Positions 2,206 to 9,102 are shown, counted from the first letter of the whole stretch. The stretch is DNA of 63,839 bases, filler included, from Octopus bimaculoides (GCF_001194135.2; 7 parts of 6 records of this genome joined end to end with filler, not necessarily neighbours in it), one strand, 5' to 3'. The notes: generated by a model from the sequence alone, not told the origin. Numbers and translations: made by a program.

Positions 2206-2647
2206 CATCATCATCGTCATCATCGTTTAACGTCCGCTTTCCATGCTAGCATGGGTTGGGCGATTTGACTGAGGACTGGTGAAACCAGATGGCTACACCA
2301 GGCTCCAATCTGATTTGGCAGAGTTTCTACAGCTGGATGCCCTTCCTAACACCAACCACTCAGAGAGTGTAGTGGGTGCTTTTATGTGCCACCGGCACGA
2401 AGGCCAGTCAGGCGGTACTGGCAATGACCACACTCAAAATGGTGTATTTTACGTGCCACCTGCACAGGAGCCAGTCCAGGGGCACTGGCAACGATCTCGC
2501 TTGAAAATCCTTTCACATGTCATGGGCACAAGTGCCAGAAAGGCGATGCTGGGCACAGGTGCTATCCTGATTTTGCAAGCTGAGTTTCGTGTCCAATGAA
2601 AGAGACGACATTGGCATGGGTGCCAGTCGTTGAAGTGGTTATGAAAT
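2206..2647 (-). mobile_element. Non-autonomous retroposon family C with (GAT)n tail
   Basis: High identity to 41129-41480 and 41851-42055 (gtttaacgtccgctttccatgctagcatggg...ctggatgcccttcctaac). The ORF at 2279-2599 is incidental. Confidence 0.8.
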
Positions 2648-3961
2648 TCACATTGTAATTATGTTATTTCAGGCTCAATCTCCACTGTTCAACATTACAG
2701 CTTGAACAATTAGCTAATAGTCAAATGAATTTGCTTGACTCTTCAGCATTTAAAGCAGCCGTATCCAGCCCAAATATTTTACCTATTTTATGTTATTTTA
2801 TGTTAAAACTGATCAGATATAACTTCTCACACCTACAACGTCATTCTAAAAAATATTCAAATTCATCATTAAAGTCTCAATACTTCAAGATAATGCATGA
2901 TTAATTTAAAACAACTTGAATAAATAATCAATACTTTTGACAAAAAATTCAGAATGCTAATGGGTTAAGTGAGAGTTGTGGTTTCAAATACCACAGAAGA
3001 TAGAAAATGCTCTTTTAACCAAACTGCTGATTCTTATATAGCATGAAATACTTTAAAACATGATAAAAAGGTATTACTTGATTAGAGAGCATAAATCCTC
3101 AATAGTTTAGAAATTAAACATTTAACTCTTTAGCATTTTAGTTTCCACTAAACAGCCATAAAAACAGGCTTCTTTTCAGGAGTGACAAGATTCTGTAAGC
3201 AAGCTTGCATGGAAAACAAACATAGGAATAGAAATAACTGCCTGAGGAGTTATTACTTAGAGGGGTACTTCTATTGATACTTTAATATTCAGATTTCTCT
3301 GCCAAACGTATTGCATATTTATTCACATTATTTTGAAGTAAACACACATTATTTTGTAGCTTCAAGATTTCAATAGTGTGTTTGTATATTTTTAGAATGA
3401 CATTGTAGGGTAGGTATGTGTGTGTGGTTGGATATGGTTAGTTTTAACAGATAGAATATTTGGCCTGGATATGGCCAGGTTAAATGCTGAAGTGTCAAAT
3501 ATGAAACAATCTAAGAAATTTTCTTTCTGCCTTGGGTATGGTATACTGTGCACTTTTCGAAGATATGTTTTAAACATGTAATTTTAAATACGATAGTGTT
3601 TTAGATGCATACATACTTGCCTCTGTGTGTGTGTGTGTGTGTGTGTCATAGCTTCCCAAAGTGGGCAATCTCATCCACTGGTGGGCGATTTCAACTTACA
3701 GGTAGGTGATGGGCGAATTTCTAGAAAATGGTGGGTGATTTGAGATTTTGGTGGGCGATATGAACATTTTGTGGATGACAATGAAATTTCAGAAATTAAG
3801 TCTGCATTTACTGATATCTAGGCATGCCTAGAATCAGGATGCTCTTTTATCATTTTGACTTGTTTATCAATCGAATATTTTTGTCACAGTCATTGCGATG
3901 GTTGTCATGTGTGCTAAAAATAGCAGCCAAATAGGCTTAGGCCTTAAATCACACTCCACCC

Positions 3962-4010
<49 letters not shown>

Positions 4011-4237
4011 ATAATTGTATGAAGTCCCACGTATAGAATTCAAATTCGCAAACATTTTCTGAAGATTAAAAAAATAAAAAAGATATGAGCAGTTAAATGT
4101 TGTGCGTAATTCTATGGGTTCGTGTCAAAACACAAGTGCTATTTTCAGGATGCTGACAAAATGTGCAATCATGCACAAAATGACAGCTTTGAAATCGTGT
4201 TTCTTGACTGGGTAAAAATGATCAAACTTTAAACCTC

Positions 4238-4908
4238 AGTAGCGTGTTGAATGTTTATACTGAGGAAAGGGAATAAATCCAAACAATAAATAATCACTAC
4301 TGTACTGTCAACAAATTTTCTTGACTGGAGGCATCAGTAAAGTGAAAATGTGAAAACAAATTTCTACAGATGGCATCAGAAAGGCAGTATGGTATTCCCA
4401 AAGAGAAGTCAATAGAGAAAAGTCAGATGACACGTCCTTACTGGAACAAATACGGATCTAGTTCGTTTGGTTGCCAGCATTTCAAAAATTAAAGTTTATC
4501 GAAAATCTTAAAGTTTGGCACATTAATGTACCTTTTCAACTTTTTCCAGAAAAATGTTTTTAAAAGTTTTTTCTGGAAAAAGTTGAAAACTCCAGCAATT
4601 TAACTTGGAAAGGTACATTAATGTGCCAAACTTCAAAATTTTCGATAAACTTTAAATTTGAAATGCTGGCAGCCAAACGAACTAGATCCATATTTGTTCC
4701 AGTAAAGAAGTGTCATCTGACTTTGCTCTATTGACTTCTTCTCTTTGGGAATACCATACTGCCTTTCTGACACCATCTGTAGAAATTTGTTTTCACATTT
4801 TCACTTTACTGATGTCTCCGGTCAAGCAAATTTGTCGACAGTACAGTAGTGACTATTTATTGTTTGGATTTATTCCCTCTCCTCAGTACAAACATTCAAC
4901 ATGCTACT
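4238..4908. repeat. Long inverted repeat (fold-back) inside the hAT element
   Basis: Arms 4238-4535 and 4609-4908 are reverse complements at ~93% (about 18 substitutions and 2 indels by eye). Nested perfect 22-bp stem 4533-4554/4568-4589. Confidence 0.95.
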
Positions 4909-6397
4909 CCAGGAAACTAGTAAACAGGAGAATGGCAAGTTAATTGTATTGCTTGTTACTAAGTCTGGGAAGTCTCACACAATTGGAGAAACATTACTTT
5001 GTCCAGTGATCGAAGAAGTTTTGCCAACCGTTATGCACGAAAAACCCGATAACATTATGAAGAAGATCTCACAATTTCTTTATGCATTGATGGAATGGCC
5101 AATGATGTCAAACATCAGTTCATTAATATTCTCCAGCGTTCTGAATTTTCTATACAAGTGGATGAGTCAACTGTTGTGGACAATCAATGTTTGATGATGG
5201 TATATGTTTGGTATTTCGACGAAGACCTTCAATCTTGTGAGGAAATGCTGTTCACAGAGGAATTAGCGCTTGATTCAAAAGGTGCAACTATTTTTCACAC
5301 TCTCAAGTCTTTCCTTTTTGAACAAATTATCTCACTCAGTAATATTCTTGTCTGTGTGTCTAATGGAACTCCTTCAATGATAAAAGAAATAGGGGGTTTT
5401 CATCTCTCCTAAAGCATGAAATTTCCCACCAGATACTATCTGTTCATTGCTTGGCATACAGGCAGCATTTAGTGGAAAAAATATGAACGATAGATTGAAT
5501 GATGTGCTACAGTTAGTTATCAAGACTGTGAACAAATTGAAGTTCAATCCCTTGTCTGATTGAATTTTCCATCAACTCTGTCTGAGAAATGATAAGGACC
5601 ATACTAAACTCTTATACCATACTGAAGTGTGGTGGCTGTCACAAGGAAACTGTGTTTTATACTTTGTTGAACTGTTTCATATAATCATATCTTTCTATGA
5701 AGATACTCCACTATCCACTTCATTGATGGCTGCAAGGTGTGATATCTTTGTGATATATTCACAAAATTAAATGACTTGAAAAAGTTATTTCAAGGAAACA
5801 GAAAAAACTCTTGTTGATTGTAAATCATTTATCACTACCTTCATTTCGAAATTGGTGTTGTATAAGACTAACATTTCAAAATGTCAATTCCATCAATTTC
5901 CACAACTTGATTCTTTGAAAGATGAATTGGTTTATGAAGATTTAAGTACATATCACAACTAACTACAATCATTGCACGATAACATGGTGGGGCAATTTCA
6001 AGATGTTATTGTGGTGAATATTCCAAATTGGTATAGCAATCCATTTGAGGTTGATGCAGTAGATTGTGAGGATAACATTCAGGAGGAATTGATAGAATTA
6101 CAAAATGACAATGACGCCACAATGCGATATCGCTGTAATGGCAAAGAAGGTTTGTGGTACCATCAGAGTATATTGAATTCCTACCCCAATATGTTGAAAC
6201 ATCTGAAATTACTTTTGCTTGCCTTTCCTACCTCATACCTGGTTAAATTTGGTTTTAACCATGTTGAAACTTTACTTACCCGCAAAAGAATTGGACTGGA
6301 TGTGACTCACATAGTAGACTTGCGGCTAAAGTCAACAAGTTTGGAACTGAATGTATCTGCACTAACTGCATCGCACCAGACACATGGATCTCATTAA
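4812..6397 (+). pseudogene. Frameshifted hAT transposase (ZBED5/SCAND3/Buster-like) with most of the BED finger deleted
   Basis: Across frames: MSPVKQICRQYSSDYLLFGFIPSP; SKQENG...KSGKSHTIGE; FSIQVDEST; VHCLAYRQHL; LLYHTEVWWLSQG; FPTSYLVKFGF (catalytic Glu lost); HQTHGSH*. Multiple stops and frameshifts. Confidence 0.9.
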
Positions 6398-6944
6398 AAA
6401 GTTTTATTCTTTATCTTTATAATACAATCATTAATTATTTTTGCATTGGTAGTTCTGATCAATGGCTCATTTGAGGAAAATGAAAATCAATATAAAAGAA
6501 AGCGCAAGTTTCCAGAAGTTAATCTGTCTGTATAATATGGAGTTAATGTTAGAATTTTATTCACACTAATGGCAAAATTAAACCCACATTAAGGGATTTG
6601 TAAACAACTTCATATTTAGTCCAAATGGCACTAGCAGGGCAATGACTCTATGATATAGTGTGTGTGTCAAATGATACAAGGAAGTGGGATTCCTGGGGGA
6701 TTTTATCTTGGGGAGGTTGTGTCTGGGGTGTTTTTACACAGGTAGGTGACGGAGCTGTTTTTAGCCAATCGGTGGGCGATATTGCAATTTGGCGTGAAAA
6801 GTTTGGGAAACACTGATATATATATATATATATATACATACGCACCACAGAAAGAGAGATAAATAGAAAGAGTTAGAGGGAAAAAGAGGTAGAGAAATAG
6901 AGAGAAAGAGATAGAAATAAAGAGAGAGTAATAGATATAGATAC

Positions 6945-6945
6945 A

Positions 6946-7022
<77 letters not shown>

Positions 7023-7149
7023 NNNNNNNNNNNNNNNNNNNNNNNNNNNNNNNNNNNNNNNNNNNNNNNNNNNNNNNNNNNNNNNNNNNNNNNNNNNNNN
7101 NNNNNNNNNNNNNNNNNNNNNNNNNNNNNNNNNNNNNNNNNNNNNNNNN

Positions 7150-7198
<49 letters not shown>
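6945..7198. repeat. (GA)n microsatellite spanning a gap
   Basis: Direct reading. Confidence 0.95.
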
Positions 7199-7199
<1 letters not shown>

Positions 7200-8619
7200 T
7201 TGAAAAAAGACTGAAGGAGAAAGAAAAACAATTTGATGTGACAATTTGTATTTGTTTTTGTACCTCTTACTCAACTACCTCTCTATTATACATGTCAGTC
7301 TTTCTACATCATTTTTCTTGACTCAACCCTGTTTTACTTTCAGAGAACATTGAGCCCAAGAGGTTTTGGTTCATGCATTATTCTGGGTTACATCTGCATC
7401 TTTTTGAGAAATAGCAATATTGTTTCAAGACAAACTTACAAATATCAATGTTTTTATAGATCAAGAGTACACTTTTTTATTTTGAAAGTAAAACAGGTAG
7501 AAAAGTTATAATGGTGCATAATATATTCTAGGTTGTAAACTGTCAAAAGAAAAGAACCTGAAACTGACTAATGATGTCTTCATTTCTGTGATGTTTAGAT
7601 TTCTATGTCCTTATGTTTAACTAACTTTCAAACAGCTGCATTGAAAANNNNNNNNNNNNNNNNNNNNNNNNNNNNNNNNNNNNNNNNNNNNNNNNNNNNN
7701 NNNNNNNNNNNNNNNNNNNNNNNNNNNNNNNNNNNNNNNNNNNNNNNNNNNNNNNNNNNNNNNNNNNNNNNNNNNNNNNNNNNNNNNNNNNNNNNNNNNN
7801 NNNNNNNNNNNNNNNNNNNNNNNNNNNNNNNNNNNNNNNNNNNNNNNNNNNNNNNNNNNNNNNNNNNNNNNNNNNNNNNNNNNNNNNNNNNNNNNNNNNN
7901 NNNNNNNNNNNNNNNNNNNNNNNNNNNNNNNNNNNNNNNNNNNNNNNNNNNNNNNNNNNNNNNNNNNNNNNNNNNNNNNNNNNNNNNNNNNNNNNNNNNN
8001 NNNNNNNNNNNNNNNNNNNNNNNNNNNNNNNNNNNNNNNNNNNNNNNNNNNNNNNNNNNNNNNNNNNNNNNNNNNNNNNNNNNNNNNNNNNNNNNNNNNN
8101 NNNNNNNNNNNNNNNNNNNNNNNNNNNNNNNNNNNNNNNNNNNNNNNNNNNNNNNNNNNNNNNNNNNNNNNNNNNNNNNNNNNNNNNNNNNNNNNNNNNN
8201 NNNNNNNNNNNNNNNNNNNNNNNNNNNNNNNNNNNNNNNNNNNNNNNNNNNNNNNNNNNNNNNNNNNNNNNNNNNNNNNNNNNNNNNNNNNNNNNNNNNN
8301 NNNNNNNNNNNNNNNNNNNNNNNNNNNNNNNNNNNNNNNNNNNNNNNNNNNNNNNNNNNNNNNNNNNNNNNNNNNNNNNNNNNNNNNNNNNNNNNNNNNN
8401 NNNNNNNNNNNNNNNNNNNNNNNNNNNNNNNNNNNNNNNNNNNNNNNNNNNNNNNNNNNNNNNNNNNNNNNNNNNNNNNNNNNNNNNNNNNNNNNNNNNN
8501 NNNNNNNNNNNNNNNNNNNNNNNNNNNNNNNNNNNNNNNNNNNNNNNNNNNNNNNNNNNNNNNNNNNNNNNNNNNNNNNNNNNNNNNNNNNNNNNNNNNN
8601 NNNNNNNNNNNNNNNNNNN

Positions 8620-8677
8620 GTCCAATGAAAGAGACGACGTTGGCATGGGTGCCAGTTGTTGAAGTGGTTATGAAATG
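8620..8677 (-). mobile_element. Terminal fragment of family C element beside a gap
   Basis: Near-identical to 2590-2647 (gtccaatgaaagagacgac...gaagtggttatgaaat). Confidence 0.8.
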
Positions 8678-9102
8678 ATGTCTTCATTTCTGTGATGTCT
8701 AGATTTCTATGTCCTTATGTTTAACTAACTTTCAAACAGCTGCATTGAAAAGCTGTCAGTGAGTGGGCTGTATTCTGCAATAAAAATGTCATATCAAGAT
8801 ATAAAAAAAGTAACTATGACCATTTTTATGCAAATTTGTGCACTAAATGCCAATGAGATTTATTATTTGTTTTAATCGTTTAACATTTAAAAGGGCCATA
8901 TCAACCTCAAATATTTTATCTGTTTTATGTTCAAAGCAGCCAAATCCAGCCTCTTGCATTGTCATTTTAAAAATAAACAATCCTATTCTCAAAGCTACAA
9001 GATAATGCATGATTAATTCAAAGCAACATAAATAAATAAGCATTATATTTGACTGAGTAATCTGAATGCTAAAGAAGTTAAAATGGTGAGCTGGCAGAAC
9101 TA

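What the first reader, a model, noticed from the sequence alone, without database searches (positions are those of the whole stretch)
4238..4908. Mu killer-like fold-back of the hAT transposase 5' end
Seen: a ~670-nt near-continuous hairpin (outer arms ~297 nt at ~93%, inner perfect 22-bp stem, one 19-nt bulge). The right arm is the native transposase leader plus first codons (ATG 4812, CRQYSSDYLLFGFIPSP) and continues into the rest of the transposase, so this is an inverted duplication of the element's own 5' end, not an inserted MITE. Both arms span the BED-finger deletion junction (~4885-4890), so the deletion came first. Established: maize Mu killer is a deleted MuDR with an inverted 5' duplication whose hairpin RNA silences the family in trans. 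Inference: read-through here would give long dsRNA against a Buster-type family, feeding endo-siRNA/piRNA or ADAR editing, which is very active in coleoids.
Basis: partly seen in the sequence, partly recalled or inferred. Interest (0 to 1): 0.75.

Follow-up and report, generated by a model that had tools for sequence, protein, structure and literature searches.

The report
Fold-back duplication inside a dead octopus transposon
A dead octopus "cut-and-paste" transposon carries a real 670-base inverted copy of its own front end, most likely an old DNA-repair accident rather than a proven silencing device like maize Mu killer.

Summary
Window 4238-4908 is a spacer-less inverted repeat: left arm 4238-4561, right arm 4562-4908. 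The arms match at 302 of 323 aligned positions (93.5%) and differ by three indels of 22, 3 and 1 nt. The RNA fold is -483 kcal/mol (z = -42).

It lies inside a degraded Buster-type hAT copy (3647-6815), whose nearest relatives are in Octopus bimaculoides and O. vulgaris. Three paralogous copies have the order A-B-zinc finger-C. The window has A - rc(B + 22 nt of C) - B - C, with the zinc finger (aa 27-83) missing. So the right arm is native (start codon 4812) and the left arm is its inverted duplicate. None of the five other copies sampled carries the fold-back. Both arms share the identical deletion junction.

The axis sits on a native 10-nt palindrome, TTTTTAAAAA. That points to snap-back or strand-switch synthesis during replication or gap repair, possibly in the same event as the deletion.

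The Mu killer-like function is untested, because no read data were available. It also faces counter-evidence:
- The terminal repeat and promoter region are not duplicated.
- No intact family member was found among the octopus proteins returned.
- The arm differences show no sign of selection for pairing.
- A published survey finds no endo-siRNA pathway in molluscs.

If the locus is transcribed, ADAR hyper-editing is the most likely fate of the RNA.

The parts
3647..6815 (+). Degraded, non-autonomous Buster-type hAT copy that contains the fold-back
   Evidence: blastn collinearity with paralogs L001, L002 and L003 from the 5' end CATAGCTTCCCAAAG to the 3' end GGGAAACACTG. Protein hits are octopus SCAND3-, ZBED5- and ZMYM6-like proteins.
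3647..3663 (+). 5' terminal inverted repeat (CATAGCTTCCCAAAGTG)
   Evidence: Conserved first bases of all four copies. It matches the reverse complement of the 3' end (CAGTGTTTCCCAAACTT) at 12 of 17 positions, read directly from the sequence.
6799..6815 (+). 3' terminal inverted repeat (AAGTTTGGGAAACACTG)
   Evidence: Paralogs end at the same bases and are followed by 8-bp target duplications (L003 GTTTAAAG on both sides).
3647..4237 (+). Region A: single-copy 5' subterminal region with repeated GGTGGGCGAT motifs; not part of the hairpin
   Evidence: Aligns end to end with L001 5195-5741, L002 4920-5517 and L003 3671-4277.
4238..4561 (-). Left arm: inverted duplicate of native region B plus the first 22 nt after the deletion junction. 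It includes an inverted copy of the start codon (4334-4332) and of codons 1-26, with one stop.
   Evidence: The reverse complement aligns to the right arm (93.5%) and to paralog region B, equally well as the right arm does. tblastn with P0004 places aa 1-26 at 4337-4260 on the minus strand.
4562..4908 (+). Right arm: native 5' leader (4562-4811), start codon and 25 codons (4812-4886), and 22 nt beyond the deletion junction
   Evidence: Collinear with L001 5749-6076, L002 5525-5833 and L003 4285-4576, and continues into the transposase body.
4557..4566 (.). Fold-back axis, on the remnant (TTTTTAAAAG) of a native 10-nt palindrome TTTTTAAAAA
   Evidence: Paralogs without the duplication have TTTTTAAAAA at exactly this native position. 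Perfect 10-nt palindromes number only 5-8 per roughly 3-kb element.
4587..4608 (+). 22-nt segment present in the right arm and in all paralogs but deleted from the left arm (the 'bulge')
   Evidence: Flanked by a GAAA microhomology, read from the sequence.
4881..4897 (+). Zinc-finger deletion junction CCTCAG|TACAAACATTC (4886/4887); its mirror copy lies at 4249-4265
   Evidence: Paralogs carry 108-155 nt here. Relative to P0004, aa 27-83 are absent and the frame shifts.
4887..6397 (+). Rest of the transposase reading frame (aa 84-591 of a full-length relative), broken into four frame pieces with four in-frame stops
   Evidence: tblastn with P0004 and three-frame translation.

Best explanation
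This is a genuine internal inverted duplication (fold-back) inside one dead copy of an octopus Buster-type hAT transposon. It was not found in any other copy sampled. The native order is A (5' subterminal region), B (leader plus first 25 codons), Z (zinc finger), C (rest of the transposase). The window has A - rc(B + 22 nt of C) - B - C, without Z.

The most economical origin is a strand switch or snap-back during DNA synthesis, either at a replication fork or during repair of the gap left by excision. A nascent strand copying C leftwards skipped Z and ran through B. It reached the native palindrome TTTTTAAAAA at the start of B, folded back on itself there, and copied about 347 nt of itself. 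That self-copy included the fresh deletion junction. The strand was then joined to A with the loss of 6 nt (TATAAC). This would explain three features at once: there is no spacer, the axis sits on a pre-existing palindrome, and both arms carry the identical junction.

Since then the two arms have drifted apart by 6.5% plus three indels, in the way neutral DNA does. The element no longer encodes a transposase. The only predictable molecular consequence is that any transcript crossing 4238-4908 would form roughly 320-350 bp of near-perfect dsRNA. In octopus such RNA would most likely be hyper-edited by ADAR rather than diced into siRNAs.

Shown: the structure, the identity of the native and duplicated arms, its absence from the other copies examined, the palindrome at the axis, and the decay pattern. 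Inferred: the snap-back mechanism, neutrality, and the fate of any RNA.
For: The native order and the extra inverted segment come from blastn against paralogs L001 (O. vulgaris) and L002 and L003 (O. bimaculoides), with base-level alignments. Both arms are equally distant from each paralog: L003 90.6 vs 90.1%, L001 87.2 vs 86.9%, L002 81.8 vs 82.1%. They are closer to each other (93.5%) than to any paralog, and they share two derived substitutions and the exact deletion junction. That is the pattern expected for an in-situ duplication.

The changes private to each arm are balanced (11 right, 8 left). The mismatches do not favour G:U pairs in the sense RNA (4 G:U on the + RNA, 10 on the - RNA, 7 neither).

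The axis coincides with TTTTTAAAAA, which is present in copies that lack the duplication. Such palindromes cover only about 2-3% of element positions.

No fold-back was found in L001-L006. The transposase is broken by a frame-shifting 57-codon deletion, at least three further frameshifts and four stops. All octopus proteins returned are fragments of 442 aa or less, against about 590 aa for full-length relatives.

From the literature: O. bimaculoides has an exceptionally high share of loci able to form long near-perfect dsRNA, and exceptionally high hyper-editing (PMC5625713). No endo-siRNA pathway was detected in molluscs, including O. bimaculoides (PMC12479628).
Against: No reads, long or short, could be laid on the locus. 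The junctions therefore rest on a single assembly that has N gaps nearby. The orthologous locus in other species and the genome-wide copy number of the fold-back could not be examined, because no DNA search of cephalopod genomes was available, the window's ORFs are not in the protein collection, and the junction-spanning ORF has no homologues. The centre no longer reads as a clean snap-back product: ACA has become GT at 4566-4567. The distal junction has at most an imperfect 3-nt microhomology (CCT). So the mechanism is inferred from geometry, not proven. Neutral decay is argued from only 21 substitutions. Lack of function cannot be shown from sequence alone.
Confidence: 0.7

Rival explanations
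1. Mu killer-like trans-silencer. Read-through or own-promoter transcription yields a long hairpin RNA whose small-RNA products (endo-siRNA or piRNA) silenced the Buster family in trans.
For: [quoted passage not shown] Region A, which may hold the element's promoter, lies directly upstream and reads into both arms. The family appears dead in octopus, as would be expected after successful silencing. The duplication arose fairly early in the copy's life, with only two shared-derived substitutions.
Against: The terminal repeat and subterminal region are not in the inverted repeat, unlike Muk (two copies of TIRA) and the Ac composite insertions (Ac 5' terminal sequences). Only 97 nt of the arms is coding sequence (75 nt before the deletion junction plus 22 nt after it). 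A survey of 32 molluscs, including O. bimaculoides, found no evidence of endo-siRNAs. piRNA production does not need a hairpin (own knowledge). The arms show no pairing-preserving substitution bias, and family death is the default fate of DNA transposons (own knowledge). No transcription or small-RNA evidence could be obtained.
Confidence: 0.07
2. Two-copy origin. The left arm is a fragment of a sister copy of the same deleted subfamily that landed in inverted orientation, by nested or aberrant (alternative) transposition or by ectopic repair. It was not copied from the right arm in situ.
For: The arms are only 93.5% identical and share just two derived substitutions. The closest paralog, L003, is about 90% identical to either arm, so the arms are not dramatically closer to each other than to other copies. 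Another copy (L005) also shows an inverted segment, so rearranged copies occur in this family.
Against: The two arms meet at the same native coordinate to within a few bases, with no spacer and on a native palindrome. An independent insertion would hit that point only by rare chance. The left arm has no element terminus, no TIR and no 8-bp target duplication. The identical deletion junction was not seen in any of the four informative paralogs (sequence printed).
Confidence: 0.1
3. Assembly artefact. A chimeric read or a mis-join of two diverged paralogs created a palindrome that does not exist in the animal.
For: The piece comes from a gapped assembly: N runs at 7023-7149 and 7648-8619, and a 99% identical 78-nt duplicate on either side of the larger gap. 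Palindromic chimeras are a known artefact of some library types (own knowledge).
Against: Artefactual palindromes are near-identical. Here the arms differ at 21 sites and three indels. At each of 19 of those sites, one arm keeps the paralog consensus while the other is derived, which is real independent divergence. There are no Ns within 2 kb of the hairpin. A mis-join would need a second genomic copy with the same private deletion junction, ending exactly at the native palindrome.
Confidence: 0.05
4. An inserted MITE or Foldback-type element that merely resembles the transposon leader.
For: The hairpin is long, AT-rich and spacer-less, like Foldback elements and palindromic MITEs. Porath et al. 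note palindromic Harbinger repeats in frog.
Against: The right arm sits where the native element has it in three paralogs and continues directly into the reading frame. Removing only the left arm and restoring 6 nt gives back the native sequence. No target duplication flanks either 4238-4908 or 4238-4561.
Confidence: 0.02

Closest known systems
Maize Mu killer (Muk)
   Same: A natural partial inverted duplication of a DNA transposon's own 5' part, including the beginning of the transposase gene, able to form a long hairpin if transcribed (PMC3440606).
   Different: Muk duplicates TIRA and gives a hairpin RNA of about 4 kb, driven by a flanking gene. Its siRNAs cause heritable silencing through plant RdDM. 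Here the arms are about 0.33 kb, start 591 nt inside the element, exclude the terminal repeat and contain only 97 nt of coding sequence. Transcription, small RNAs and silencing are all untested, and the host phylum appears to lack an endo-siRNA pathway. The superfamily also differs: hAT here, Mutator in Muk.
Maize 'Ac killer' alleles p1-ww-id1 and p1-ww-id4
   Same: Same superfamily (hAT). Inverted repeats of the element's 5' sequences arise spontaneously. One is apparently transcribed from the element's own promoter. The same could apply here, because region A lies upstream of both arms.
   Different: Those alleles arose by alternative transposition engaging the termini of two elements, coupled with re-replication. 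They give kilobase-scale repeats that include the Ac terminus, inside composite insertions. The octopus fold-back involves no terminus, pivots on an internal 10-nt palindrome, and looks like a strand-switch or snap-back product.
Internally rearranged non-autonomous hAT derivatives formed by abortive gap repair (for example Ds from Ac; Rubin and Levy 1997, cited from my own knowledge and not read here)
   Same: Internal deletion combined with locally templated, sometimes inverted, filler DNA in a hAT element. Breakpoints are clustered: the duplication ends 22 nt past the deletion junction.
   Different: Reported fillers are usually tens of bases, whereas here about 347 nt were copied. The link to excision repair rather than ordinary replication is only inferred.
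Inverted-repeat dsRNA loci edited by ADAR (hyper-editing clusters), very abundant in O. bimaculoides
   Same: A long, near-perfect intramolecular duplex formed by repeat-derived DNA (PMC5625713). The window holds a second, older example at 2735-3498.
   Different: Typical substrates are two separate repeat copies in opposite orientation with a spacer. This one is a spacer-less self-duplication inside one element. No editing or expression data were available.
Drosophila hairpin RNA (hpRNA) endo-siRNA loci (own knowledge)
   Same: Long genomic inverted repeats that fold as single transcripts.
   Different: hpRNAs are defined by Dicer-2/AGO2-dependent 21-nt siRNAs. Molluscs appear to lack that dedicated pathway, and nothing of the kind was tested here.

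Membership tests
Buster-family hAT transposon (non-autonomous, degraded copy) | Transposase homologous to the Buster clade (ZBED5/Buster1, SCAND3/ZBED9, FAM200) | tested here: met
   Best hits are octopus proteins that NCBI names SCAND3-like, ZBED5 and ZMYM6-like, plus scorpion ZBED5-like and FAM200C-like proteins, with precomputed PF14291, PF27073 and PF27046 domains. tblastn covers aa 1-26 and 84-591 of the 591-aa relative P0004. ZBED5 belongs to the Buster family (PMC3606216). The local Pfam copy gave no transposase-domain hit even for positive controls P0004 and P0018 (one sub-threshold zinc-finger match to P0004), so its negative result is uninformative.
Buster-family hAT transposon (non-autonomous, degraded copy) | Short terminal inverted repeats | tested here: met
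   CATAGCTTCCCAAAGTG at 3647-3663 against the reverse complement of 6799-6815, 12 of 17 matching. The ends are conserved in four copies.
Buster-family hAT transposon (non-autonomous, degraded copy) | 8-bp target-site duplication | tested here: inconclusive
   Paralogs: L003 has GTTTAAAG on both sides and L002 has CATTCGAC/CATTGGAC. The window copy is flanked by GTGTGTGT and ATATATAT, both microsatellites, so no matching duplication is visible.
Buster-family hAT transposon (non-autonomous, degraded copy) | Intact transposase reading frame (autonomy) | tested here: not met
   Zinc finger (aa 27-83) deleted with a frame shift, at least three further frameshifts and four stops. This makes the copy non-autonomous but does not affect family assignment.
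Mu killer-type transposon 'killer' locus | Inverted duplication of part of the element's own transposase gene and 5' region | tested here: met
   The left arm is the reverse complement of the native leader, 25 codons and 22 nt.
Mu killer-type transposon 'killer' locus | The terminal inverted repeat or 5' terminus (promoter region) lies inside the inverted repeat | tested here: not met
   The arms begin at element position 592. Region A with the terminal repeat is single-copy. Muk holds two TIRA copies, and the Ac killers hold Ac 5' terminal sequences.
Mu killer-type transposon 'killer' locus | Transcribed into a hairpin RNA | not testable with these tools
Mu killer-type transposon 'killer' locus | Hairpin-derived small RNAs | not testable with these tools
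   No small-RNA data were accessible. The literature reports no endo-siRNA pathway in molluscs, including O. bimaculoides (PMC12479628).
Mu killer-type transposon 'killer' locus | Dominant, heritable trans-silencing of active family members | not testable with these tools
   This needs genetics. No intact family member was found among the octopus proteins returned, so there may be no present-day target.
Fold-back (snap-back / strand-switch) inverted duplication | The two arms meet at the same native coordinate with no spacer | tested here: met
   The reverse complement of the left arm and the right arm both start at the native TTTTTAAAAA. One base separates the innermost arms.
Fold-back (snap-back / strand-switch) inverted duplication | A pre-existing short palindrome or inverted repeat at the axis | tested here: met
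   TTTTTAAAAA is present at this position in L001, L002 and L003, which lack the duplication. There are only 5-8 such 10-mers per element.
Fold-back (snap-back / strand-switch) inverted duplication | Microhomology at the distal junction | tested here: inconclusive
   At 4237/4238 there is only an imperfect CCT/AGG match offset by 1-2 nt. After 6.5% divergence this cannot be judged.
MITE / Foldback-type inserted element | An independent unit with its own ends and target duplication, unrelated to its host sequence | tested here: not met
   The right arm is native host-element sequence in three paralogs, and there is no flanking duplication.
ADAR hyper-editing substrate | Long, near-perfect intramolecular duplex | tested here: met
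   About 320-350 bp at 93.5%, -483 kcal/mol.
ADAR hyper-editing substrate | Expressed, with clustered A-to-G mismatches in RNA reads | not testable with these tools
   No sequencing runs were available.

The most novel reading that the evidence does not exclude
This would be an animal counterpart of the maize transposon 'killers'. Early in the life of this Buster family, a self-made hairpin was transcribed from the element's own 5' region. It seeded small RNAs (piRNAs, or a cryptic germline siRNA-like class) that shut the family down in octopus. It would be the first such case outside plants and in a phylum thought to lack endo-siRNAs.
Probability: 0.05. Interest if true: 0.75.

Novelty: new member of a known kind. 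Interest (0 to 1): 0.3.

Why it matters
The locus is a clean, datable example of how a DNA transposon copy can acquire a long self-complementary segment through one strand switch at a tiny native palindrome. It shows that the raw material for 'killer' loci, and for the long dsRNA that ADAR edits so heavily in octopus, can arise inside a single element without a second copy. If RNA and small-RNA data showed arm-derived small RNAs, it would test whether hairpin-triggered transposon silencing exists in a lophotrochozoan. Without such data it is a well-documented structural curiosity in a repeat-rich genome where inverted repeats are common.

Tried and rejected
- **Sequencing runs.** So there was no check by long reads, RNA-seq, small RNAs or editing.
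- **Local Pfam scans.** Scans of the conceptual transposase gave nothing. The positive controls gave no transposase-domain match either: P0018 had no hit and P0004 only a weak, sub-threshold zinc-finger hit. The negative is therefore uninformative, and I relied on the precomputed domains and source names.
- **Exact look-up of window ORFs.** Ten window ORFs were looked up and none is in the collection. The source record and the orthologous loci could not be fetched.
- **Homologue search with the junction ORF.** The 77-aa ORF spanning the junction has no homologues by word search. No further copies with the same deletion or fold-back could be retrieved.
- **Rfam and tRNA scans.** Neither found anything in the window. 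The flanking repeats are not recognisable tRNA-derived SINEs by these tools.
- **MITE insertion.** Considered and rejected.
- **Left arm from a different paralog.** Considered and rejected, because both arms are equally distant from every paralog.
- **Selection for RNA pairing.** Tested through mismatch types: 4 G:U on the + RNA against 10 on the - RNA. This gives no support for selection.
- **Background frequency.** In about 87 kb of other octopus loci, no inverted repeat over 80 nt exceeded 78% identity. The hairpin is unusually good locally, although the literature reports many such loci genome-wide.
- **Dating.** Not attempted, because I had no calibrated substitution rate.

Full report
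**1. The observation**

Window 4238-4908 is a single, spacer-less inverted repeat. The repeat finder returns four contiguous arm pairs:
- I1: 4238-4408 / 4738-4908, 94%
- I4: 4404-4486 / 4657-4739, 94%
- I5: 4485-4542 / 4602-4659, 91%
- I9: 4533-4560 / 4562-4589, 93%, with one base between the arms

Folded as RNA, positions 4230-4915 give -482.8 kcal/mol. Dinucleotide shuffles give -139.6 +/- 8.2 (z = -42). My alignment of the right arm with the reverse complement of the left arm gives 302 identical positions out of 323 (93.5%), with 21 substitutions and three indels. The largest indel is 22 nt (4587-4608) and is missing from the left arm.

**2. The host sequence**

Three-frame translation and a protein search show a decayed hAT transposase. 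The best hits are Octopus bimaculoides and O. vulgaris proteins that NCBI names SCAN domain-containing protein 3-like, zinc finger MYM-type 6-like and ZBED5. Next come scorpion ZBED5-like and FAM200C-like proteins of about 590 aa. The relatives carry precomputed domains PF14291, PF27073 (FAM200-ZBED5 RNase-like) and PF27046. [quoted passage not shown]

tblastn with the full-length relative P0004 (591 aa) gives this layout:
- aa 1-26 at 4809-4886
- aa 1-26 again, inverted and with a stop, at 4337-4260
- nothing for aa 27-83, the zinc finger
- aa 84-591 in four frame pieces with four in-frame stops, up to 6394

The element ends are CATAGCTTCCCAAAGTG (3647-3663) and AAGTTTGGGAAACACTG (6799-6815). 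They are conserved in four copies. Paralogs have 8-bp target duplications: L003 has GTTTAAAG on both sides, and L002 has CATTCGAC/CATTGGAC. The local Pfam library returned no transposase-domain match even for the positive controls, so I disregard that negative.

**3. Which arm is native**

I fetched the genomic loci of five octopus relatives and one more distant copy:
- L001, O. vulgaris OX597826.1
- L002, L003 and L004, O. bimaculoides
- L005, O. vulgaris
- L006, GCA_046766455.1

blastn of the window against them gives these correspondences:

| Window segment | L001 | L002 | L003 |
|---|---|---|---|
| A, 3647-4237 | 5195-5741 | 4920-5517 | 3671-4277 |
| B, 4557-4886 (L003 hit 4557-4846) | 5749-6076 | 5525-5833 | 4285-4576 |
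| C, 4887 onward | 6185 onward | 5989 onward | 4817 onward |

In the paralogs, region B follows region A directly. In L001 and L002, 108 and 155 extra bases (the zinc-finger region, Z) lie between B and C. In L003 this stretch is partly Ns.

The native order is therefore A-B-Z-C. The window has A - rc(B + first 22 nt of C) - B - C. The right arm is the native leader (4562-4811), the start codon and 25 codons (4812-4886), and 22 nt beyond the deletion. The left arm is an inserted inverted copy. No paralog has a second, inverted B, and an inverted-repeat scan of all five loci finds nothing comparable. L006, with an intact zinc finger, also lacks it.

**4. The deletion junction**

The base-level alignment shows CCTCAGTA(C/T)|AAACATTCAAC in both arms. 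L001 and L002 have zinc-finger codons at that point. The junction is identical in the two arms and was not seen in L001, L002, L004 or L006. L003 has Ns there. The deletion therefore predates the duplication or arose in the same event. Later gene conversion between the arms is a less parsimonious alternative.

**5. Relationship of the arms**

Both arms are equally distant from each paralog:

| Paralog | Right arm | Left arm |
|---|---|---|
| L003 | 90.6% | 90.1% |
| L001 | 87.2% | 86.9% |
| L002 | 81.8% | 82.1% |

The arms are closer to each other (93.5%) than to any paralog. Against the paralog majority, 11 changes are private to the right arm, 8 are private to the left arm and 2 are shared-derived. 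This is the pattern of an in-situ duplication that happened fairly early in the copy's history, followed by independent and roughly symmetrical decay. It also argues against an assembly or sequencing artefact, which would give near-identical arms.

Among the 21 mismatches, 4 would be G:U in a sense transcript, 10 would be G:U in an antisense transcript and 7 would be neither. Nothing suggests that pairing has been preserved by selection.

**6. How it arose (inference)**

In the paralogs, region A ends ...AAACCTC and is followed by TATAAC TTTTTAAAAA CATTTTTCTGG.... In the window, AAACCTC (4231-4237) is followed by AGTAGCG..., the reverse complement of ...CGCTACT at 4902-4908.

The left arm runs to CCAGAAAAATGTTTTT. 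There it meets AAAAGTTTTTTCTGG, which is the native sequence again. The axis therefore lies on the native 10-nt palindrome TTTTTAAAAA, and 6 nt (TATAAC) are lost. Native elements hold only 5-8 perfect 10-nt palindromes in about 3 kb. A random axis would hit one about 2-3% of the time.

A single model accounts for the geometry:
1. A nascent strand is synthesised leftwards through C.
2. It skips Z and continues through B.
3. On reaching the palindrome it snaps back and copies about 347 nt of itself, including the new junction.
4. It is then joined to A.

This could happen at a replication fork. It could also happen during synthesis-dependent repair of the gap left by excision, the 'abortive gap repair' route known for Ds formation from Ac (Rubin and Levy 1997, cited from my own knowledge and not read here). 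The duplication ends only 22 nt past the deletion junction, which fits clustered template switches in one event.

Two later changes sit at or near the axis. The central bases changed (ACA to GT at 4566-4567), and the left arm lost the 22-nt segment that lies 26-47 nt from the axis in the right arm. Both are the kind of centre-modifying change that stabilises long palindromes (own knowledge). Alternative transposition, the origin of the maize Ac killers, is unlikely because no element terminus is involved.

**7. What it does**

Nothing functional could be tested. The assessment rests on anatomy and the literature.

[quoted passage not shown] It is thought to give a hairpin RNA of about 4 kb by read-through from a flanking gene (PMC3440606). 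The Ac killers contain inverted repeats of Ac 5' terminal sequences, 1.8-3.9 kb long, that give dsRNA and 21-24 nt siRNAs.

The octopus structure shares the principle of self-complementarity in the element's own 5' part. It differs in four ways:
- The terminus is not duplicated.
- The arms are about 0.33 kb, with only 97 nt of coding sequence.
- The element and all octopus relatives returned are broken.

By contrast, O. bimaculoides is exceptional both for hyper-editing and for the fraction of loci that can form long near-perfect dsRNA. Porath et al. estimate 4.4 x 10^-3 of random 50-mers (PMC5625713). So if the locus is transcribed, from region A or as part of a host transcript, ADAR hyper-editing is the most likely fate. 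The hairpin would then be one of very many such substrates.

**8. Verdict**

The structure is real and well explained. It is a fold-back duplication, found in this copy and in none of the five others sampled, inside a dead, zinc-finger-deleted Buster-type hAT copy. It pivots on a native palindrome. My probabilities are:
- real in-situ fold-back with no demonstrated function: 0.7
- two-copy origin: 0.1
- killer-like function: 0.07
- assembly artefact: 0.05
- MITE: 0.02

It is a new instance of a known kind of rearrangement. It resembles the maize 'killers' in form, but it fails one structural criterion for membership and the functional criteria are untested. Interest is modest at 0.3. It would rise sharply only with small-RNA or expression evidence.

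Noticed in passing
window 2735-3498 (arms about 2735-2960 and 3282-3498); related copy at 8871-9082: A second, older fold-back (72-81% complementary; pairs I2, I6, I8, I12). It is formed by two oppositely oriented copies of an interspersed repeat. A third, direct copy lies near the right end of the piece, and further copies occur in O. vulgaris locus L005 (29271-29503, 17558-17703, 16482-16608). It shows that inverted-repeat dsRNA-forming loci are common in this region.
   Followed up: partly
window 2206-2496: An interspersed repeat of about 290 nt with at least ten copies (70-84% identity) in the 38-kb locus L005. Its 3' part (2375-2493) matches a tandem-like array at L005 35043-36216. No tRNA or Rfam match was found, so its class is unknown.
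   Followed up: partly
window 7570-7647 and 8674-8751, flanking the 972-N gap 7648-8619; also 2591-2647 vs 8620-8676: A 78-nt stretch is repeated at 99% identity on both sides of the large N gap (D5). The first 57 nt after the gap match 2591-2647 at 96% (D8). This looks like assembly redundancy or uncertain scaffolding at the gap edges. The region to the right of 7648 may not be truly contiguous.
   Followed up: no
window 3618-3646 and 6816-6838: The hAT copy has no matching 8-bp target duplication. It is flanked by a (TG)n run on the left and an (AT)n run on the right, while paralogs L003 and L002 have clear 8-bp duplications. Either microsatellite slippage erased the duplication, or the two ends come from different insertion events (recombination).
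   Followed up: partly
window 3965-4007: A T-run of about 43 nt inside region A. It is an expansion of an 8-12 nt T-run in the paralogs. The window copy also lacks 39 nt of region A that the paralogs have, just after position 3849.
   Followed up: yes
L005 31722-34013 (O. vulgaris OX597817.1): Another copy of the family is rearranged in a different way. Window 5048-6022 matches L005 32509-33495 in the forward direction. It is immediately followed by window 6078-6592 in the inverted direction (L005 34013-33499, 90.5%). Part of this copy is annotated as the C-terminal part of a 287-aa 'hypothetical' protein (P0028). Inversions may be recurrent in this family.
   Followed up: partly
window 6845-7203 (with N run 7023-7149): A long (GA)n / (AGAT)n-type microsatellite block directly downstream of the element, interrupted by a 127-N gap.
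   Followed up: no
window 3664-3760 and paralogs: The 5' subterminal region holds several copies of a GGTGGGCGAT(T/A)T-like motif, conserved among the four copies. These are probably subterminal transposase-binding repeats, as in other hAT elements (own knowledge).
   Followed up: no
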